DNA from: Octopus bimaculoides
Taxonomy: Eukaryota
Direction: 5' to 3'
Length of the DNA stretch: 39,566 nt
NCBI RefSeq assembly: GCF_001194135.2
Contig: NC_068982.1
Coordinates: 91,789,114-91,828,679 of the forward strand
The translations under genes and the position numbers were made by a program. Shown here one piece after another: positions 4,012 through 37,155 of this stretch (its first letter is position 1; every line of letters starts with the position of its first letter). Below the pieces are notes generated by a model. It did not search any database. It saw only the letters and a list, made by a program, of their open reading frames with translations, and was not told where the DNA came from.

Positions 4012-5334
4012 CTGGGGTTAGACAAAATAATGGAAACACCTAGCATCATAACATCATAATTTTGAAATATCTATAAAAACGTCAAAAGCTTGTTTATGTT
4101 TATGTTTATGTTTTTTGATTTATTGTTAGTATTGCTTAATACGTTTTGCTAAAATTGCTGTTTGTTTTCGGATATCATCAGAAAAAGGTAATTAAAATTC
4201 ATTAAAATGACAGATCTATCGAACTTTCAAAGAGGTCAAACTGTTGGTGTTCGTATGGCAGGCATTTGCGTAACAAAAAACAGCCGAAATATTTGGTGTC
4301 TTGAAAGTAATGACAGCCTTTGAGAAAGAGGAAAAAAAAACCCTCGTCGAAACAAAACTCCGCAAGAAAACCAAAACTTTCAGATAGGGACTGTCGGACT
4401 GTCGAATTGTAAGACAGGATCACAAAAGTACAGCTCCCAAAATTACTGCAGAGCTTACTGACCACGTCGAGAACCCAGTTTCCACAAAAACTGTTCGCCG
4501 GGAGCTGCACAAAGCCGGATTTAACGACAGGGCTGCAATCAGAAGACCACTACTTTCAAATACAAACGTTGCAAGTGTTTAAAGTGGAGTAAAATCCTAC
4601 AGAATTGGTCCCTAGAGCAGTGGAAGAATGTTATTTTCTCGGATGAGTCATCTTTTACCTTGTTTCCGACCACCGGCCGAATATACATGTGTAGACGGCC
4701 AAAAGAAGCATTTGACCCAGACTACCTTCTTCCAACTGTTAAACATGGAGGAGGATCTGTGATNNNNNNNNNNNNNNNNNNNNNNNNNNNNNNNNNNNNN
4801 NNNNNNNNNNNNNNNNNNNNNNNNNNNNNNNNNNNNNNNNNNNNNNNNNNNNNNNNNNNNNNNNNNNNNNNNNNNNNNNNNNNNNNNNNNNNNNNNNNNN
4901 NNNNNNNNNNNNNNNNNNNNNNNNNNCATCCTATGGTTGCGAAACTGTTTCCGGAGAGAAACGCAATCTTTCAGGATGATAATGCACCAATTCACACAGC
5001 TGAAGTTGTTACTGAATGGCACGAGGAACATTCTAGTGAAATTGAACATCATATCTGGCCACCACAGTCCCCAGATCTCAATATCATTGAACATTTATGG
5101 TGCATTTTAGATAAACAAGTAAAGAGTCGATATCCTCCACCATCATCAATACAAGAACTGGAGACTGTTTTAACTGAAGAATAGACAAAAATTCCTTTGG
5201 AAACAATTCCAACTTTGTACGAGTGCATACCTCGTAGAATTCAAGCTGTAATTACTGCCAAAGGCAGTCCTACCCCATATTAAAATAATTTTTTTGAAAT
5301 TTTAAGGTGTTTCCATTATTTTGTCCAACCCCAA
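4012..5334 (+). mobile_element. Full-length Tc1-like DNA transposon, DD36E (Incomer-like), 1323 bp
   Basis: 30-bp TIRs CTGGGGTTAGACAAAATAATGGAAACACCT (4012-4041) and AGGTGTTTCCATTATTTTGTCCAACCCCAA (5305-5334), 2 mismatches. TA on both sides (4010-4011, 5335-5336). Confidence 0.9.
4207..5283 (+). pseudogene. Tc1 transposase pseudogene, DD36E triad
   Basis: MTDLSNFQRGQ start. Motifs VIFSDES, FQDDNAPIH and WPPQSPDLNIIE, with 36 residues between D(N) and E. Frameshifts in the 5' part, premature TAG at 5182-5184, N-gap 4764-4926. Confidence 0.85.
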
Positions 5335-12267: not shown

Positions 12268-12392
12268 ATACATACACACATGCATACATACATACATATA
12301 CGCGCGCGTACGCACTCTCATACACACACACACACACACACACACCTATGTATGTATTGTGTATATATATATGTTTGTGTGTGTATGTATGT

Positions 12393-12431
<39 letters not shown>

Positions 12432-12625
12432 TTATTCAGTTTTATTTCAAGATTTCTTACCAATAGAGAAAGAGCCGATTTCTAACCCAGATCCAAGGCT
12501 TCTTCATTGGAATACCAACATCAACAAGGCATTTTTGTATGCATGTGTGTGTATGTATGTATGTATGTATGTAGGTAGGTAGGTAGGTAGGTAGGTAGGT
12601 AGGTAGGTAGGTAGGTAGATAGGTA
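12268..12625. repeat. Microsatellite cluster: (TACA)n/(CA)n/(TG)n at 12268-12430 and (TATG)n-(TAGG)n at 12545-12625
   Basis: Direct inspection. Confidence 0.85.
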
Positions 12626-12777
12626 GTGTTTGCGTTTTAATATTCCACCAACTTCATCATCATCATCATCAATATTTTTAAAACCATGATGAAGGTGGAT
12701 ATCCATTGTCAACGCTGCTATAATATCGAACAGAACATTATTGTCGGACTTGACGTCCTAATGTTTGCGACCTAAAA

Positions 12778-12840
12778 CAGTGGTTCTCAACCATCGTCCA
12801 TATGGCCTTTGGGAATCCATATAAAATTCGGAGGTTTAGT
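12778..12840 (+). mobile_element. hAT-Charlie-like terminus fragment
   Basis: CAGTGGTTCTCAACC is a typical Charlie/MER-type TIR start. No partner TIR found. Confidence 0.4.
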
Positions 12841-12940
12841 AACTGCTCAGCTCTATTTTGATGATCGTACAGTGATGCTCAACGTAGATTTTAATATGTA
12901 TATTTTCACCTAATGCAATCACAGGTCTTTTATAATGCTT

Positions 12941-12963
12941 CTTTTTCTTCTCCAATATTTCAG
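12941..12963 (+). promoter_or_regulatory. 3' splice acceptor (polypyrimidine tract + tttcag) ahead of the neuropeptide coding exon
   Basis: cttctttttcttctccaatatttcag ends at 12963, 17 nt before the ATG, implying a separate upstream 5'UTR exon. Confidence 0.65.
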
Positions 12964-12980
12964 ATCCACCGTTTGTGATC

Positions 12981-13373
12981 ATGCCTAGAATTACGGTATT
13001 AACACTACTTTCGATAACGTCCTCAATGCTAGTATTTTACTGCCTTGCATCGGAGTTGAAGCCCGAACAGATCAACCGACCACAATCTATTGCAGCTCCT
13101 CGCACAGAGCGAGACACAACCAGAGCATCGAAAGATGTTCTGGCTAATATCTTATTAAACATCTTACGAGAAAGGAATATGGCAAATGGATATATAAACT
13201 ATCCATCGGCTTCCAGTTTGGATAACCAGCTTGATTCATCGTCTCAGCTACAGAAGAAGAATACATATTACGGTTACCGTCGAAGCAATGGACGTGTGCC
13301 ATCGTTCGGAAGTAAGATTTTCCCTTCTTCATCAGAAGAAGATAGCGGTCCTTCAGTTTTTAGGTATGGTTAA
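12981..13373 (+). CDS. NKY: Neuropeptide precursor, 130 aa, NKY (neuropeptide KY)-like RYamide prepropeptide
   Basis: ATG at 12981 in an atcATG context. Hydrophobic signal peptide MPRITVLTLLSITSSMLVFYCLA. KK at aa 92-93, RR at aa 100-101. Ends VFRY-G-stop (amidation donor Gly). The predicted peptide KNTYYGYRRSNGRVPSFGSKIFPSSSEEDSGPSVFRYamide starts with K, ends in RYamide and carries an SFGS motif as recalled for annelid/mollusc NKY peptides. Intact non-repetitive ORF among decayed TEs. Family call is from memory and needs BLAST. Confidence 0.8.
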   Translation: MPRITVLTLLSITSSMLVFYCLASELKPEQINRPQSIAAPRTERDTTRASKDVLANILLNILRERNMANGYINYPSASSLDNQLDSSSQLQKKNTYYGYRRSNGRVPSFGSKIFPSSSEEDSGPSVFRYG

Positions 13374-13380
13374 TTTAAAA

Positions 13381-13530
13381 AACAACAACAAAATGGAACT
13401 ATTCACTGACACGCCTAATTTTAACTACAACTGTAGAAATTACAACTTCAACAACAACAACATCAACAGCAGCAGCAATAATATTAACAAGAACACCAAC
13501 AACAACAGCAGCAGCAGCAGAAATAAGCAG
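13381..13530 (+). repeat. Compound (AAC)n/(AGC)n trinucleotide repeat in the putative 3'UTR
   Basis: aacaacaac...agcagcagc runs directly after the stop codon. Confidence 0.8.
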
Positions 13531-13573: not shown

Positions 13574-13579
13574 AATAAA
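13574..13579 (+). promoter_or_regulatory. Candidate polyadenylation signal AATAAA for the neuropeptide gene
   Basis: AATAAA about 200 nt after the stop codon, followed by A/T-rich sequence. AT-rich DNA yields such hexamers by chance. Confidence 0.35.
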
Positions 13580-13669: not shown

Positions 13670-13985
13670 CAGAGAGCAGGGAATGGGAGAACCCGTAGAG
13701 TGCCGGACAAGGTGCCTTGCGGTATTTGTTACAGCCCTTTATGTTCTGGGTTTGAATCCTGCTGAGTTCAACTTTGTCTTTCATCCCTCTGGGATTGGTA
13801 AGGTGCCAGTCAAGAACTGGGGTAGATTTAATCGACGAATACCCTCTACTATCTCCCAAATTGTTGACCTTGTGTTTACATCAGAAACAACTATTTTAAA
13901 CAGGTCCCTTATGTCCTAAATTGAAATCCTCATCGAGGTCGACTTTACCTTTTGTTCTTCCTGGGCCGATAAAGCAAAGTCAAGG
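13670..13985 (+). mobile_element. Diverged SINE family B plus partial second copy (13920-13985)
   Basis: gggtttgaatcctgctgagttcaactttgtctttcatccctctggg...ctggggtagatttaatcgac, then gaggtcgactttacctttt...gggccgataaa. Confidence 0.65.
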
Positions 13986-18272: not shown

Positions 18273-20714
18273 CACAATGTAACACAAGTTTTATTTATAT
18301 TTTTTGCCACTAAATTCAAAAATCACATTCGCTTTGATGCAACATCAATAGTTATTTATTTATTCCTAATTTCATATTTGCTCGTTATATTTGTAACTTT
18401 TCTCTACAGCATTTTGTTGGTTCAATCTATTCCAGTATTGTAAGGATAATTACACAACATTTAGACCTTTTTCATATATTGAAAGGTATTTAGGAAGTAT
18501 AATATTAGTTAGAACAAAAATAAACAATAAAACTCTGCACTGTAAATGCCTTGATAACTCTTTTCTTAAGATGAGAAGTGCTTTGACGATCGAGATTTTC
18601 TGGAGTGTATACCTTCATCTCTTCTGACTAGAGACCATATATAATCTTCCATCAAAGCAGTATTCCATTGTCCTTGGTATCTTCTTTCCATAGTTGCGGT
18701 GTCCTGATGAAATCTCTCACCATGCTCCTCACTGACATCACCCAAGTTTTCAGGGAAAAAATCTAGGTGAGAGTGCAAAAAATGAACCTTTAAGGACATA
18801 CGAGAACCCATTTTCAATAAACTTTGCTACCAGATGTTTGTAATTAGGATCCTTGTGATTTCCTAGGAATCCACGAACTACATCACGAAATACACACCAA
18901 GCTTCTTTTTCAACTTTTGTCATCGCTCTTTCCAATTTCTTTGACTTTAACATTGCATTTACTTGGGGCCCAACAAATATGCCACCCTTGATCTTAGCCT
19001 CAAATAGCTTTGGAAACATAAGACAAATTTCTTGAAAAGCTTCTCCTCTAAAATATAAGGCCTTCACAAACTGTTTTACNNNNNNNNNNNNNNNNNNNNN
19101 NNNNNNNNNNNNNNNNNNNNNNNNNNNNNNNNNNNNNNNNNNNNNNNNNNNNNNNNNNNNNNNNNNNNNNNNNNNNNNNNNNNNNNNNNNNNNNNNNNNN
19201 NNNNNNNNNNNNNNNNNNNNNNNNNNNNNNNNNNNNNNNNNNNNNNNNNNNNNNNNNNNNNNNNNNNNNNNNNNNNNNNNNNNNNNNNNNNNNNNNNNNN
19301 NNNNNNNNNNNNNNNNNNNNNNNNNNNNNNNNNNNNNNNNNNNNNNNNNNNNNNNNNNNNNNNNNNNNNNNNNNNNNNNNNNNNNNNNNNNNNNNNNNNN
19401 NNNNNNNNNNNNNNNNNNNNNNNNNNNNNNNNNNNNNNNNNNNNNNNNNNNNNNNNNNNNNNNNNNNNNNNNNNNNNNNNNNNNNNNNNNNNNNNNNNNN
19501 NNNNNNNNNNNNNNNNNNNNNNNNNNNNNNNNNNNNNNNNNNNNNNNNNNNNNNNNNNNNNNNNNNNNNNNNNNNNNNNNNNNNNNNNNNNNNNNNNNNN
19601 NNNNNNNNNNNNNNNNNNNNNNNNNNNNNNNNNNNNNNNNNNNNNNNNNNNNNNNNNNNNNNNNNNNNNNNNNNNNNNNNNNNNNNNNNNNNNNNNNNNN
19701 NNNNNNNNNNNNNNNNNNNNNNNNNNNNNNNNNNNNNNNNNNNNNNNNNNNNNNNNNNNNNNNNNNNNNNNNNNNNNNNNNNNNNNNNNNNNNNNNNNNN
19801 NNNNNNNNNNNNNNNNNNNNNNNNNNNNNNNNNNNNNNNNNNNNNNNNNNNNNNNNNNNNNNNNNNNNNNNNNNNNNNNNNNNNNNNNNNNNNNNNNNNN
19901 NNNNNNNNNNNNNNNNNNNNNNNNNNNNNNNNNNNNNNNNNACTTAGTAAGACCCAGATCCCTGATTAAATCATCTAGCTCACTCTGATTTGGAAAGTGA
20001 GGCTCCAAAGTCATTCTTGGTACGAAAGCTTCCTCCATTTCTTGGCTGCTGCTACTTGTTGACTCTTCAGATGAAATATTTTCTGGTGGTAGTGGTACTC
20101 GTAAACTGTCATCATGTGGGACAGGTGCTCTAGATGATGGTATGTCTGGATACTGAAGAGCTTGTCTTCCTTTCACTTTTCTGTACTTTGTCACATCAAT
20201 CATACAAAAGTAAGTCATCGTGATGGCTCTTTGGTTCCCTCCATACCCTTGGAATGGCAAAAGGCATTGACCTTCCTGTACCTCTTAACCATCCTTCTAG
20301 AGTAGATCGACAGCTTCCACATATCACATGTGGGGCCCATGGTTTGCCCTGGTCACCCATGGGCATTCTGAAATAGAGTCTGTACACTATCTTATGTAAT
20401 ACCTGCTTTTTTCCAATATAATAACCACACACATAGCAAAATGTAGCTGGAGAATTTTTACATACTCTAGTAGCCATCCTGAAAGTAGCAGAACTTAGTA
20501 ATTGGTCTCAAAGAGAAAATTAGACGTACATTTAGTAGCGGAACATTATAAACAATACTGAATATATAATAACATTGGAAGTCGACATATTTATTTAACT
20601 GTTGATGATACACAAAAAATAATTTCATTTTTGGAATCAGCAGGAAAAATGGATTGATAAACAAAACAAAAAAAATACAATAAACAATTTTTTTTTGAAA
20701 ATTGTTATGTTGTG
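18273..20714 (-). mobile_element. Chapaev3-like (CMC superfamily) DNA transposon, 2442 bp including N-gap
   Basis: Termini CACAATGTAACA (18273) / TGTTATGTTGTG (20714), similar subterminal tttttg..ct.aattcaaaaat blocks, 3-bp TSD TAA at 18270-18272 and 20715-20717. CAC ends with a TWA TSD are the recalled Chapaev3 signature. Confidence 0.75.
18566..20477 (-). pseudogene. Chapaev3-like transposase pseudogene
   Basis: N-terminal Cys-rich MATRVCKNSPATFCYVCG...WAPHVICGSC...WREPKSHHDD(C)YFC. C-terminal MSLKVHFLHSHLDFFPENLGDVSEEHGERFHQD...RYQG. Frameshifts near 20215 and 18817, gap 19080-19941. Confidence 0.8.
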
Positions 20715-31246: not shown

Positions 31247-32050
31247 ACGAGGGTAATCCCAAAAGTAAGGTCTCCGAAGTGTTGGGGATGCAGGGAAACT
31301 GTGCGTGCAGCTATTGGCAACACTGTTGTGTTTGTTGTGCGTGTGCCTGCGCGCGCCTCGCTGTCATGCTCAGTTTTGGCTTGGCAGTTGTATCTGATGG
31401 AGCTACTGATTGACACTACTACCAAGTGTGAAGTTCGCGCAGTTATTTGGTTTTTGAACGCAAAAGGCATCAAACCGATTGAAATTCATCACCAGTTAAC
31501 AGATGTGAATGGCGAGTCGTGCATGGTTGTCAAAAACGTCCACAAGTGGTGTAGAGAGTTTGAAGCTGGTCGTACTGAAATTCATGATGATGAAAGAAGT
31601 GGACAACCATCAATTTCCGACGAAACAGTCACAATGGTTGAGTAAATCCTGCATGGAAATCACGCTGGATCATCTCCGCATTTTGGTTCCTGAGGTTTCC
31701 CGAAACACCATTCACAGGATTTTGAGTGAAAGGTTACAATATCGGAAGGTGTGCGCAAAATGGTTCCTGTGAATGCTCACAGAAGAACATAAACAGCAAC
31801 GAAGACCATAAATTGGACATCATCAGCCACCCACCTTATAGTCCAGACTTGGCACCCAGTTGAAAGAATATTTGGCCGGAATGAGCTTCAGCAACGACGA
31901 CGAGGTGAGAGATGAAGTTCAATGCTTCCTCAACGACATGGCGGTGAGCTGGTATGACATGGGCATACAAAAACTGCCACAGCGCCTACGAAAACGCCTT
32001 TGAAATGGCGATTATGTAGAAAAATAGATAAATGTTCAAACTTTAAAATG
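31247..32050 (+). mobile_element. Internally deleted mariner element (transposase about 31397-32027)
   Basis: Begins TA-CGAGGGTAATCCCAAAAGTAAGG. HTH region KCEVRAVIWFL...IEIH...KWCREF..GRTEIHDDERSG, RKVCAKW (WVP motif), YSPDLAPS, GIQKLPQR...GDYVEK. Most of the catalytic core is deleted and the 3' TIR is not found. Confidence 0.8.
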
Positions 32051-34159: not shown

Positions 34160-37155
34160 TTTTTTTCGGAAGTCCTGCAGCGATGGGAAGGTGGTGAAGC
34201 ATGCAGACCTGACGGGTTGGAAGCATGTAGTCAGCGACCTGCACGTAGGCGGCCCATGCTTGATATAAAGTCGTCTCTTTGTCGCCCAAGACAGCGGTAG
34301 GATTCGGTTGCTGCATGGGTGTCTGAGCAGCTCCATTTGGAGAGGGCACTGCTCACCCGGAGACCGGGGATGTTCTAGAAAAGGTGAACCAAAAGTTGCC
34401 TGTCTTTCCATATTTGGTCAGTTTAGCGCGACTGATGGATGTCCATCCTGCGCTCGAAAAACAAAGAGTCTTTTATTTATAAAATCTGGACGGAACTTAA
34501 ACATTTCATGTTGGAATGTTCGCATTCTGTTGGACAACAAGAGTGATTGTAAGCCTGAAAGACGCACTGCACTTGTTGCTCGTGAGCTGAACCGTTATAA
34601 AATTGATATAACTGCACTCTCAGAGACTCGTATAGAAGGTGATGGTCAGCTTGAGGAAGTAGGAGATGGATACACCTTTTTTTGGAATGGAAGGCAGAAG
34701 GAGGAGCGCAGAGAGGCTGGTGTTGGTTTTGCAGTCCGATCTGATATCCTTAAGAAGTTGGAAGAGCTCCCTGTTCCTATAAATGAACGTATAATGACGC
34801 TACGGTTGCACTTGAAAGGTAAGCGATTTGTTACTCTAATAAGTGTCTATGCACCTACTTTGACTAGCTGTGATGAAGATAAAACAATCTTTTATACCCA
34901 GCTGAGAGCCATACTTAGAAAAATCTCCAATTCTGATAAAGTCATTCTACTGGGGGACTCTAATGCCAGGGTTGGAACAGACTGGCAAACATGGAACTCT
35001 CTAGGACGTTTTGGAGTAGGGAAAAAGGAATAGCAATGGTCTCATGCTACTGGAGCTTTGCAAAGAACGTGTACTTTACATCGCAAGCACTCATTTTGTG
35101 CACAAAGGTGATAACACAACAATATAGATGCATCCAAGGTTCAAAGTTTGGCACTTGCTGGATTATGTCATCATCCGCAAGCGCGACATTTATGACATTT
35201 GTAATGTCAAGTCCTTGCATGGATCAGAATGCTGGACAGACCACAGTCTGGTGCAAGCAAAGTTCCGAATGGTGATTAGGGTGAAAGAGAGAAGAAGACT
35301 AGTCAGCATTCCTCACCGTCTAAATGTCCACAAGGTATATGATGTTGTGGTTAGGAAAGAACTTCAGACTCGCTTGTCCAGCATTGAAACTGTTGCAGCA
35401 TGGGAGGATTTTCGAGACCAGGTTGTTCAATGTGCAGCCGAAACACTGGGGTATGTTACTGCCAGATACAGTGATTGGTTTGATGAGAATGATGCTGAAG
35501 TTCAGCGACTATTATAGGTAAAGTGCCATGCCCACAGTGTATTGCTACACAGAGAACTGTCTACTGTGCAGCAAAGTCTAGCACTTGCCCACAATAACAG
35601 TGTAAAATCACTACTGCAGCGATCTCTCAGGAAGATGCAGAACACTTGGTGGGAGGATCTTGCTCGTGATGTTCAGGCTGCTGCTGATGCAAATGACAGC
35701 AAGGAGCTTTACCATCTTATGGAGTGAGCTTATGGATCTAAGAGCTCCACATCAGCTTCTTTGCTTTCCAAGGAGTCTTCCACTCTGTTTACTAAATCAA
35801 CAGAAATCACAGGTCGCTGGATCGAACACTTCTTTGAACTCCTAAACTATGAGTCAGTTGTGGATGAAACAGTGATTGATACTATGCAACAAAGACCTAT
35901 CATTGGCTCTTTAGACTCCTCGCCCTCAATAGATGAAGTAATGACATCAATAAGTAAATTGAATCTTGGAAGGGCACCTGGAAAGGATGGAATTTGTGCT
36001 GAGGTCTAGCGATTTGGTGGTAATTACATCACACAGTCCCTTCATGAACTTATTAGTGCAGTCTGGAGGGATGGTGCAATCCCTAAGGACTAGAAGGATG
36101 CAATTATTCTTCCTCTATATAAAGGAAAAGGAGCCAGAACAATGTGTGGTAACAACAGAGGTATTGCTCTATCAGCTGCTGGCAAGGTTCTTCGCTGATT
36201 TGCTGCCAATTCAAAGGTTCTCCAGCCTATTATTCGTGACCTCCTTTATGCAAATGACTGTGACTTAGTCACTCATACAGTGGATGACATGCAAATACTC
36301 ATGAATTGCATTTCTGCTTCTTGCAAGGCATTTGGATTTAGCATTAGCCTGGACAAGACTGTTGTAATGTTCCAGCCTGCACCAGGAAATTCATATATGG
36401 AACCAGCTATCTTGGTTGAAGGAACAATTCTGAAGGTAGTAGACAAGTTTGTCTACCTGAGCAGCACACTCAGCCGTTCTTGCTCCCNNNNNNNNNNNNN
36501 NNNNNNNNNNNNNNNNNNNNNNNNNNNNNNNNNNNNNNNNNNNNNNNNNNNNNNNNNNNNNNNNNNNNNNNNNNNNNNNNNNNNNNNNNNNNNNNNNNNN
36601 NNNNNNNNNNNNNNNNNNNNNNNNNNNNNNNNNNNNNNNNNNNNNNNNNNNNNNNNNNNNNNNNNNNNNNNNNNNNNNNNNNNNNNNNNNNNNNNNNNNN
36701 NNNNNNNNNNNNNNNNNNNNNNNNNNNNNNNNNNNNNNNNNNNNNNNNNNNGCTCTATGGAGAACTTGTGAATGGAAGGAGACTCCGGCAGAAACCAAGG
36801 CTGCGATTTAAGGACTGTGTCAAGTCCTCATTAAAGGCCTGTGATATGCAGGACACTGACTGGGAGAACAATGCCTGTCAGATGGAGGAAGCAGGTTAAG
36901 GAGGGGATCGACACTTTTGAGAGAGCACATATCCAGCATGAAGAACTTAAGCGAGCTGCGCGAAAGCGCACGGCTCGTATAGTGAATGGGGGAAAGCTTG
37001 GTCTGCAATGTTTGCAGTCATGTATGCTTGTCAAGAGCAGCGCTCATTAGCCACCAACGGAGCCGCAAATGCAAAATATAAGTTAGTCCTAGCGCGCACA
37101 ATGTTCCTGAAGGTCGGCAATGGCCTTTCTCGGTCACGAGTGGACGGCCATCACG
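34160..37155 (+). mobile_element. Near full-length RTE-clade LINE (BovB/RTE-1-like), decayed, RT internally deleted
   Basis: APE motifs CWNVR, ALSETR, ISVYAPT, ILLGDSNARVG, LLDYVII, WTDHSLV. RT APGKDGI, GKVL, LLYANDC. Late LYGEL...PRLRFKD and a C-terminal Zn-knuckle-like end. 3'UTR runs into (TATG)n. Confidence 0.9.

What the first reader, a model, noticed from the sequence alone, without database searches (positions are those of the whole stretch)
12981..13373. Probable cephalopod NKY-type RYamide neuropeptide precursor hidden in a TE desert
Seen: an intact 130-aa ORF with a signal peptide, an amphipathic propeptide helix (VLANILLNILRER), KK and RR sites, and a terminal FRY-G-stop. Established: Gly before the stop is the amidation donor. 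NKY peptides of molluscs and annelids begin with Lys, end in RYamide and have been linked to sNPF/PrRP-type receptors. Inference: this is an NKY paralogue. It is the only host gene in about 40 kb and is short enough to be missed by annotation.
Basis: partly seen in the sequence, partly recalled or inferred. Interest (0 to 1): 0.75.

Follow-up and report, generated by a model that had tools for sequence, protein, structure and literature searches.

The report
Third NKY neuropeptide gene in octopus
The 130-codon reading frame is a real, conserved octopus gene for a secreted precursor of an NKY-type RYamide neuropeptide; it is a third, unnamed paralogue beside the two NKY genes already listed for octopus, so it is a useful annotation rather than a new kind of thing.

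Summary
Window 12981-13373 (+) is an intact 130-codon ORF with an N-terminal hydrophobic leader, a Leu-rich propeptide helix, KK and RR sites, and FRY-Gly-stop. ORF length alone is not significant; about 0.23 such ORFs are expected per random window. Conservation is what supports it.

- **Octopus vulgaris:** the syntenic locus carries the same 130-aa ORF, with 8 of 393 nucleotide differences, no indels and dN/dS 0.18.
- **Sepia esculenta:** larval RNA-seq assemblies carry a 122-aa orthologue (43% identity) that also ends in VFRYG-stop.

Profiles built here from published NKY sets place the protein in the annelid-like NKY subgroup. That subgroup includes Platynereis NKY-1 and Lottia Lotgi1|173017, with the motif ...TRxaSFGSKLvP...RYG. 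It scores 41 bits (E 3e-11), against a best of 9.3 bits in 2000 shuffles. BLASTP against the Lottia protein gives E 2e-9. It does not fit the NKY-2 or NPY/NPF profiles.

O. bimaculoides already has a canonical NKY (Ocbimv22003823) and an NKY-2 (KOF94157.1), so this is a third paralogue. It is in UniRef, and in O. vulgaris it is "hypothetical predicted protein" CAI9718432.1.

Processing to a roughly 36-residue amidated peptide, and signalling through a GPCR, are inferred.

The parts
12981..13373 (+). Complete coding sequence of the NKY-type precursor (130 codons plus TAA), in one exon
   Evidence: The same ORF lies at the syntenic O. vulgaris site (L001 10001-10393), with dN/dS 0.18. HMM match to annelid-like NKY: 41.1 bits.
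12981..13049 (+). Predicted signal peptide, residues 1-23 (MPRITVLTLLSITSSMLVFYCLA | SE); cleavage placed after C-L-A by the -3/-1 rule
   Evidence: Hydropathy. Helix 3-25 in the model. C21, A23 and S24 are invariant between octopus and cuttlefish. No SignalP run was possible, so the cleavage site is inferred.
13107..13178 (+). Propeptide helix, residues 43-66, containing VLANILLNILRERN
   Evidence: AlphaFold2 helix 43-66; pLDDT is about 81 for residues 51-60. It aligns to the ..ILRDILAERNLE.. segment of Lottia Lotgi1|173017 and to the NKY HMM.
13254..13259 (+). Dibasic KK92-93 processing site in front of the peptide
   Evidence: Invariant in octopus and cuttlefish. It aligns to the KK/KR site of NKY precursors.
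13260..13367 (+). Predicted mature peptide NTYYGYRRSNGRVPSFGSKIFPSSSEEDSGPSVFRY (36 residues; 37 if K93 is kept). It contains the family motif RVPSFGSKIFP (13293-13325) and an octopus-only RR (13278-13283).
   Evidence: Collinear alignment with NKY peptides. 100% identical in O. vulgaris; 18 of 36 residues identical in Sepia esculenta.
13368..13373 (+). Gly130 (amide donor) followed directly by the TAA stop
   Evidence: RYG-stop is also found in the O. vulgaris and Sepia orthologues and in many mollusc NKY precursors. The Arg128 codon is AGG here but AGA in O. vulgaris and Sepia, so the GT of the donor-like AG|GTATGG is not conserved.
13574..13579 (+). Candidate polyadenylation signal AATAAA, 200 nt after the stop
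   Evidence: Sequence; conserved in O. vulgaris. No octopus transcript data were available, so this is inferred.
12751..12963 (+). Conserved upstream block with candidate promoter elements: CRE-like TGACGTC (12751-12757), TATAAAA (12820-12826), TATAAT (12931-12936), and TTTCAG (12958-12963), which fits either a splice acceptor or an initiator
   Evidence: Sequence. 92-98% identity to O. vulgaris over 12684-12983. The function of these elements is untested.

Best explanation
This is a single-coding-exon Octopus gene, probably from O. bimaculoides. It encodes the precursor of an NKY-type neuropeptide of the annelid-like subgroup. That subgroup includes Platynereis NKY-1, Capitella and nemertean NKY, and, in molluscs, Lottia Lotgi1|173017, Solemya, Laevipilina and Gadila 70139. 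The gene is a paralogue of the two NKY genes already catalogued in octopus. The inferred mechanism is as follows. The leader (residues 1-23) takes the precursor into the secretory pathway. Prohormone convertases cut at KK92-93, and possibly also at RR100-101 or R105. Carboxypeptidase trims the basic residues. Peptidylglycine alpha-amidating monooxygenase uses Gly130 to make a C-terminal ...SVFRY-amide. The resulting 36-residue peptide (or a 28- or 24-residue fragment) is released and acts on a rhodopsin-type GPCR of the sNPF/NPY receptor group. What is shown: the ORF, its conservation under purifying selection, transcription of the cuttlefish orthologue, and family membership by profile. What is inferred: the processing sites, amidation, neuronal expression and the receptor.
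For: - ORF and motifs.
- O. vulgaris orthologue: 3 amino-acid changes, all in the spacer; peptide region identical; dN/dS 0.18; no indels, although the flanks are full of them.
- Sepia esculenta orthologue P0004: 43% identity over the full length, ends in VFRYG-stop, and is present in 30 Logan assemblies. The runs traced (SRR19578113, SRR23936174, SRR23936169) are cited in papers describing larval or juvenile transcriptomes. Several contigs start within about 15 nt of each other, and one is fused to an Illumina adapter.
- Family placement: HMM of annelid-like NKY 41.1 bits, E 3e-11, versus a shuffle maximum of 9.3. A mollusc-only version gives 37.2 bits. Sepia scores 27.4. The canonical FWQPLGY-type HMM gives 12.0 (shuffle maximum 10.8) and NKY-2 gives 5.4.
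- BLASTP: against Lottia Lotgi1|173017, 33% over 81 aa, E 2e-9; against Solemya, E 2e-6.
- The alignment is collinear: propeptide helix, KK, aromatic pair, R-x-x-SFGSK-hydrophobic-x-P, then RYG at the extreme C-terminus.
- AlphaFold: leader helix, propeptide helix, disordered peptide region, as expected for a prohormone.
- Literature: NKY definition and receptor data.
Against: - No transcript, peptide or expression-site data for the octopus gene itself. An exact-sequence look-up found no transcript contig.
- The N-terminal core motif of NKY-1, FW[RQ]P[LM]G[YG], is degenerate here: TYYGYRR in octopus and TWYRYRG in Sepia.
- The whole-database searches found only the cephalopod orthologues at significant E-values. 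Family placement therefore rests on profiles that I built from published supplementary sequences.
- The signal peptide was judged by hydropathy and the -3/-1 rule only.
- The cognate receptor of NKY peptides is itself disputed in the literature.
Confidence: 0.85

Rival explanations
1. The gene is of NKY ancestry, but its product is not a neuronal transmitter or hormone. It could be a secreted peptide used in another tissue, such as salivary or venom gland or skin, or one whose active part is the conserved propeptide rather than the RYamide peptide.
For: Conservation between octopus and cuttlefish runs along the whole precursor (43% overall versus 50% in the peptide), not only in the peptide. 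No tissue data are available for octopus. The cuttlefish runs traced come from larval or juvenile transcriptome studies, so they do not localise expression. Cephalopod salivary glands are known to express neuropeptide mimics.
Against: The family motif and the RYG-stop amidation signal are strictly kept in three species. The venom-gland survey, which used a neuropeptide KY model among its queries, lists only stanniocalcin, luqin, myosuppressin, tachykinin and neurotensin mimics among its confirmed hits.
Confidence: 0.1
2. It is a chance or decaying ORF with no function, for example a TE-derived or pseudogenised fragment in repeat-rich DNA.
For: A 130-codon ORF is not rare by chance here: 0.23 are expected per window. 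The surroundings are transposon fragments and microsatellites.
Against: dN/dS is 0.18, dS equals the flank divergence, and there are no indels. The region is single-copy in the window. An orthologue is retained and transcribed in a cuttlefish. The profile match is E 3e-11.
Confidence: 0.03
3. It belongs to another RF/RYamide family, either NPY/NPF or sNPF/LFRFamide, rather than NKY.
For: The C-terminal VFRY-amide is identical to peptides on the O. bimaculoides sNPF/LFRFamide precursor Ocbimv22002924 (GVFRYG, TVFRYG). In this window the Arg128 codon is followed by a donor-like GT at the position where NPY/NPF genes carry their conserved intron.
Against: The NPY/NPF HMM scores no better than shuffles. 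There is no proline-rich N-terminus, no RPRF/Y motif and no C-terminal extension. The Arg codon is uninterrupted, and the GT is absent from O. vulgaris and Sepia. sNPF precursors carry many short copies, whereas this one carries a single long peptide at the extreme C-terminus. The Smith-Waterman z-score against the octopus sNPF precursor is 2.6, versus 7-8 for NKY members.
Confidence: 0.02

Closest known systems
Annelid-like ('b-type') NKY precursors of molluscs: Lottia gigantea Lotgi1|173017, Solemya velum 35353, Laevipilina hyalina 80564, Gadila tolmiei 70139 (NKY query collection of Thiel et al. 2021, PMC8557429, supplementary file 27)
   Same: Same architecture and collinear motifs: leader; propeptide helix (..ILRDILAERNLE.. 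versus ..ILLNILRERNMA..); KK; an aromatic pair; R-x-x-[SA]FG[SQ]K-[LI]-x-P; and ..RYG at the very end of the precursor. BLASTP E 2e-9 to Lottia. Mollusc-only HMM 37.2 bits.
   Different: The cephalopod peptides lack the IPIQT/LPVET stretch before the Arg and are shorter there. Octopus has an extra RR. The peptide ends in VFRY rather than LLRY/MLRY.
Platynereis dumerilii NKY-1, and Capitella and nemertean NKY
   Same: The same SFGS[RQK]I motif, RYG end and single long C-terminal peptide. These sequences are part of the HMM that scores 41.1 bits. Partial NKY peptides were detected by mass spectrometry in Lineus.
   Different: These keep the KxFW[QP]xMGGPLPVETR core, which the cephalopod peptide has largely lost (TYYGYRRSNGR). 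They end in RYGRR/RYGK rather than RYG-stop.
Canonical mollusc NKY: O. bimaculoides Ocbimv22003823, Idiosepius DB914896.1, Aplysia, Deroceras 'neuropeptide KY'
   Same: Same species group, same C-terminal ..VFRYG-stop, and a single peptide at the precursor's end.
   Different: It is a different gene. The canonical form has KAFWRPMGYLP and no SFGSK motif. BLASTP similarity is limited to the last 9 residues (E 0.015). The HMM of that subgroup scores 12.0, about the shuffle maximum.
NKY-2: O. bimaculoides KOF94157.1, Platynereis NKY-2
   Same: A long peptide ending in RYG at the precursor's C-terminus.
   Different: The defining G[YF]WIWMPAQG motif is absent. The NKY-2 HMM scores 5.4 bits, equal to shuffles.
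NPY/NPF precursors (e.g. O. bimaculoides XP_014777727.1)
   Same: A roughly 36-residue amidated peptide with an Arg-aromatic end. NKY has been described as a paralogue of NPY-type peptides.
   Different: There is no PP-fold sequence signature, no RPRF/Y, no C-terminal flanking peptide and no intron in the Arg codon. The HMM does not match.

Membership tests
NKY (neuropeptide KY) precursors | Secretory precursor with an N-terminal signal peptide | tested here: met
   Hydrophobic stretch at residues 4-24, basic Arg3, and C-x-A|S fitting the -3/-1 rule, conserved in Sepia. Helix 3-25 in the model. This is a heuristic test only; SignalP was not available.
NKY (neuropeptide KY) precursors | One long peptide (about 35-43 residues) placed at the extreme C-terminus of the precursor, preceded by a dibasic site with Lys | tested here: met
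   KK92-93 is followed by 36 residues, then Gly and the stop. The layout is the same in the published NKY set. Whether the mature peptide keeps an N-terminal Lys is not known; in Lineus, mass spectrometry shows cleavage after KK.
NKY (neuropeptide KY) precursors | C-terminal Arg-Tyr-Gly amidation signal (RYamide) | tested here: met
   FRYG-TAA in the window. The same is seen in O. vulgaris (through a synonymous AGG/AGA change) and in Sepia. Amidation itself cannot be tested with these tools.
NKY-1 subgroup as defined by De Oliveira et al. 2019 | Central/N-terminal consensus FW[RQ]P[LM]G[YG] | tested here: not met
   Octopus has TYYGYRR and Sepia has TWYRYRG. Only the aromatic pair and one Arg line up.
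Annelid-like NKY subgroup (Platynereis NKY-1, nemertean NKY, Lottia 173017 and others) | Profile similarity, including TR-x-x-SFGS[KRQ]-[LI]-x-P and the ..IL..ERN.. propeptide helix | tested here: met
   HMM 41.1 bits, E 3e-11, shuffle maximum 9.3. Mollusc-only HMM 37.2 bits. Sepia 27.4 bits. BLASTP E 2e-9 to Lottia.
NKY-2 | G[YF]WIWMPAQG motif | tested here: not met
   The motif is absent and the HMM scores 5.4 bits, equal to shuffles.
NPY/NPF | Intron inside the codon of the Arg of the C-terminal RF/RYamide | tested here: not met
   R-Y-G-stop is contiguous in genomic DNA of two Octopus species. The GT after AG is not conserved.
NPY/NPF | Profile similarity (Pro-rich N-terminus, ..YYAIVGRPRF/Y) | tested here: not met
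   The NPY/NPF HMM gives no score above shuffles. Smith-Waterman z-scores are 2.0 (octopus) and -0.4 (Sepia).
NKY (neuropeptide KY) precursors | Peptide activates an sNPF/NKY-type GPCR | not testable with these tools
   Only literature data for Platynereis and Crassostrea are available, and those papers question whether that receptor is the physiological one.

The most novel reading that the evidence does not exclude
Coleoid cephalopods keep three NKY genes, and this one is the direct descendant of the ancestral spiralian (annelid-like) NKY. It has lost the FWxPMGG N-terminal core but kept the SFGSK...RYamide half. If the C-terminal half is the active part, and if it acts on a receptor other than the sNPF receptor, this peptide and its shorter 24-28-residue forms would be a clean probe for the still-unassigned physiological NKY receptor.
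Probability: 0.15. Interest if true: 0.5.

Novelty: new member of a known kind. Interest (0 to 1): 0.3.

Why it matters
It gives a functional name to a gene that public databases carry only as a hypothetical or uncharacterised protein, and it raises the octopus NKY count from two to three. It also shows that cephalopods, like Lottia, scaphopods and chitons, kept both the annelid-like and the mollusc-type NKY. That matters for reconstructing the NPY/NKY/sNPF peptide families and for choosing ligands in receptor deorphanisation. The gain is incremental: the family, its architecture and its presence in cephalopods were already published.

Tried and rejected
- **Splice donor at the Arg codon.** In this window the codon is followed by AG|GTATGG, at the position of the NPY-family intron, so the stop might have been intronic. 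Rejected: O. vulgaris and Sepia have AGA TAT GG., with no GT, and the Sepia contigs read RYG-stop.
- **Large protein searches.** The word-indexed search with the ORF, with the cephalopod alignment and with a 14-sequence NKY alignment returned only the cephalopod orthologues and one chiton-like protein. The exhaustive HMMER scan added only P0004 plus two repeat proteins, P0003 and P0005. I regard those two as spurious summed matches to the Leu-rich helix.
- **Pfam.** No family; the ExbD hit at E 0.2 is noise.
- **First NKY-1 HMM** (nemertean, phoronid, brachiopod and one chiton). It gave only 15 bits and hhalign probability 55%. This was too weak to decide, and one shuffle scored 18.6 bits against the NPY/NPF HMM, a reminder of the noise level. 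The question was resolved only after the full published NKY collection was found.
- **Literature searches.** No hits in main texts for the peptide strings. The stored supplements of De Oliveira et al. 2019 are truncated and did not show this protein.
- **Nucleotide comparison of Sepia transcripts with the window**, to locate a 5' exon. Only simple-repeat matches were found.
- **Rfam and tRNA scans of the window.** Nothing was found.
- **Exact-sequence look-up of the window's protein in assemblies.** Nothing on record.

Full report
**1. Observation**

Window 12981-13373 on the + strand is an intact reading frame of 130 codons ending in TAA.
- a basic-then-hydrophobic leader, MPRITVLTLLSITSSMLVFYCLA;
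- the segment VLANILLNILRER;
- KK at residues 92-93 and RR at 100-101;
- the C-terminus FRY-Gly-stop.

Hydropathy places the only strongly hydrophobic stretches at residues 4-24 and 53-62. An AlphaFold2 model from the three-sequence cephalopod alignment shows helices at 3-25 and 43-66 and an unstructured C-terminal half. This is the usual picture for a prohormone. The helix is better described as Leu-rich and hydrophobic than as clearly amphipathic.

ORF length alone proves nothing. First-order Markov simulations of the window give on average 0.23 ATG-initiated ORFs of at least 130 codons.

**2. Host and conservation**

The exact protein is already in UniRef and MetaClust. Its 90% cluster contains a second member, CAI9718432.1, 'hypothetical predicted protein' of Octopus vulgaris.

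The O. vulgaris locus (OX597815.1:157,993,050-158,013,442, locus L001) is collinear with the window over about 3.7-27 kb. Substitution identity is about 93-95%, with many indels. From this divergence and the 12% of Ns, I infer that the window comes from another Octopus species, most likely the O. bimaculoides draft assembly.

Inside the ORF there are 8 differences in 393 nt and no indel. Five are synonymous. The three non-synonymous ones (N66S, S79N, S88P) all lie in the spacer. The Nei-Gojobori estimates are dS 0.056, the same as the flanks, and dN 0.010, giving dN/dS 0.18. The gene region is single-copy within the window.

**3. Deeper orthologue and transcription**

The exhaustive HMMER scan of 1.8 billion representatives found one true relative. 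This is P0004, a 122-aa protein with 43% identity over its full length. Its C-terminal part reads ...QLKKKDTWYRYRGIDSRVPAFGSFFSPSPSDNSDTSKVFRYG-stop.

P0004 occurs in 30 Logan assemblies on contigs of about 0.9-1.1 kb. Runs SRR19578113, SRR23936174 and SRR23936169 are cited in papers describing larval or juvenile transcriptomes of Sepia esculenta. Several contigs begin within about 15 nt of one another, and one is fused to an Illumina adapter, as expected at a transcript's 5' end. The cuttlefish orthologue is therefore transcribed.

For the octopus gene I found no transcript record.

Positions invariant between octopus and cuttlefish include:
- the C-x-A-S leader cleavage region;
- the Leu-rich helix;
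- KK;
- T-x-Y-x-Y-R;
- RVP-x-FGS;
- VFRYG.

RR is not conserved; Sepia has R-G.

**4. Gene structure**

The whole coding sequence is one exon. In this window the Arg128 codon and what follows read AG|GTATGG. This looks like a splice donor, and it sits at the position where NPY/NPF genes carry their conserved intron. However, O. vulgaris and Sepia have AGA TAT GG., so the GT is lineage-specific and the stop after Gly is genuine.

An AATAAA lies 200 nt downstream (13574-13579) and is conserved in O. vulgaris.

Upstream, 12684-12983 is 92-98% identical to O. vulgaris. It holds a CRE-like TGACGTC, two TATA-like elements, and TTTCAG 17 nt before the ATG. Five upstream ATGs lie between the first TATA-like element and the start codon. 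This argues that this stretch is not in the mature 5' UTR. The alternatives are a 5' UTR exon further upstream or a start site right next to the ATG. I could not decide between them without octopus RNA data.

**5. Family**

Pfam and the large sequence searches give no family, as is normal for short neuropeptide precursors. I therefore took labelled sequences from published supplements.

A first HMM was built from nemertean, phoronid, brachiopod and chiton NKY. It scored the octopus protein at 15 bits, against a maximum of 4.7 in 2000 shuffles. NKY-2 and NPY/F HMMs gave nothing. This was suggestive but weak, and hhalign probability was only 55%.

The full NKY query collection of Thiel et al. 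2021 (PMC8557429, supplementary file 27) settled the question. It shows that O. bimaculoides already has two NKY genes:
- a canonical NKY, Ocbimv22003823 (...KRKAFWRPMGYLPFDNHGG...AVFRYG);
- an NKY-2, KOF94157.1 (...EPNWIWMPSHGYVPVP...ILRYG).

It also shows that mollusc NKY-1-like sequences fall into two kinds:
- the FWQPLGY kind;
- an annelid-like kind with ...IPIQTR-x-A-SFGSKL-x-P...LLRYG, seen in Lottia Lotgi1|173017, Solemya, Laevipilina and Gadila 70139, next to Platynereis NKY-1, Capitella and nemerteans.

HMM scores (bits):

| HMM | Octopus (window) | O. vulgaris | Sepia | Best of 2000 shuffles |
|---|---|---|---|---|
| Annelid-like NKY | 41.1 (E 3e-11) | 36.4 | 27.4 | 9.3 |
| Annelid-like, four mollusc members only | 37.2 | 33.3 | 18.9 | 7.3 |
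| FWQPLGY kind | 12.0 | 12.8 | 9.8 | 10.8 |
| NKY-2 | 5.4 | 5.5 | 6.6 | 5.3 |

The match covers the propeptide helix as well as the peptide.

BLASTP results for the window ORF:
- against Lottia Lotgi1|173017: 33% identity over 81 residues, E 2e-9;
- against Solemya: E 2e-6;
- against the octopus's own canonical NKY: only the last nine residues align, E 0.015.

The ORF is therefore a third NKY gene of coleoids, belonging to the annelid-like subgroup. The strict NKY-1 consensus FW[RQ]P[LM]G[YG] is not met; only the aromatic pair and an Arg remain.

**6. How it most likely works (inferred from the established prohormone pathway)**

- The leader is removed after Ala23.
- Convertases cut at KK92-93.
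- Carboxypeptidase trims the basic residues.
- Gly130 is used for amidation, giving NTYYGYRRSNGRVPSFGSKIFPSSSEEDSGPSVFRY-amide (36 residues, 4091.95 Da).

Shorter forms may arise after RR101 (28 residues, octopus only) or after R105 (24 residues). In the nemertean Lineus, mass spectrometry found partial NKY peptides that start after KK and after the equivalent monobasic Arg.

The C-terminal VFRY-amide is shared with the canonical octopus NKY and with two peptides of the octopus sNPF/LFRFamide precursor. NKY peptides activate the Platynereis and Crassostrea sNPF-type receptor only at high nanomolar to micromolar concentrations. The authors of those studies suspect cross-talk and an unidentified true receptor. 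The receptor of this peptide is therefore open.

**7. Context**

The rest of the window contains:
- transposon debris: a Tc1/mariner DDE_3 fragment at 4660-5184, a Mos1-type HTH around 31.4-31.6 kb, and a LINE endonuclease at 34308-35033 with adjacent ORFs;
- microsatellites;
- assembly gaps (12% N).

No Rfam family or tRNA was found. The O. vulgaris annotation has no other gene within 10 kb either side. 'Isolated small gene in repeat-rich DNA' is a fair description. 'Missed by annotation' is not, because the gene is predicted but unnamed.

**8. Verdict**

It is a new member of a known family. Its value lies in annotation and in clarifying NKY family history, not in a new kind of system. Interest 0.3.

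Noticed in passing
window 13362-13373: In this window the Arg128 codon is AGG followed by TATGG, giving a donor-like AG|GTATGG at the position where NPY/NPF genes have their conserved intron. O. vulgaris and Sepia have AGA here, so it appears to be a coincidence of one synonymous change.
   Followed up: yes
window 13356-13370; O. bimaculoides Ocbimv22002924 and Ocbimv22003823 (from the paper supplements): Three different octopus precursors (this one, the canonical NKY and the sNPF/LFRFamide precursor) all yield peptides ending in VFRY-amide. This could explain the receptor cross-activation reported for NKY and sNPF peptides in other spiralians.
   Followed up: partly
P0003 (1278 aa) and P0005 (1063 aa): Two long repeat proteins scored against the ORF only through many summed weak matches to the Leu-rich helix region (for example QDALASVLLGSLRTENL repeated 16 times). 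I treated them as spurious. Their origin is unknown.
   Followed up: partly
window 13442-13507 (3' UTR) and 12551-12626, 12372-12430 (upstream): A CAA/CAG-rich repeat in the putative 3' UTR, and (GTAG)n and (TG)n microsatellites upstream. All differ in length between this window and O. vulgaris.
   Followed up: partly
window 13690-13900: Directly after the putative poly(A) site there is a stretch with a tRNA B-box-like GGGTTTGAATCCTGC, which might be a tRNA-derived SINE. ARAGORN and Rfam found nothing, and there is no second copy in the window.
   Followed up: partly
window 4660-5184, about 31400-31645, 34308-35517, 36280-36899: Transposon remnants: a Tc1/mariner DDE_3 domain (E 4e-14), a Mos1-type HTH_48 (E 7e-5), and a LINE-type endonuclease (E 8e-9) followed by further ORFs without Pfam hits. 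All are interrupted by N runs.
   Followed up: partly
window 19076-20260 (-): An ORF fragment (…EPHFPNQSELDDLIRDLGLTK) next to an N gap has no Pfam hit. It looks to me like part of a transposase-associated protein; this is from memory and was not tested.
   Followed up: no
L004 1-25 and L003 1-80: The Logan contig L004 starts with an Illumina adapter remnant (GTTCAGACGTGTGCTCTTCCGATCT) fused to the 5' end of the cuttlefish transcript. L003 extends about 80 nt further upstream and contains TGACATCA and TTTATAAG motifs, which may be promoter sequence or a longer transcript.
   Followed up: partly
Acanthochitona crinita 91490 and 69823 (supplement of PMC6425005): Two further chiton precursors ending in RYG-stop also score against the annelid-like NKY HMM (23.1 and 12.5 bits). 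One carries RRLVSFGRKL, the other MTPFGRRLI. Chitons may therefore hold more NKY-like genes than the two named subgroups.
   Followed up: partly
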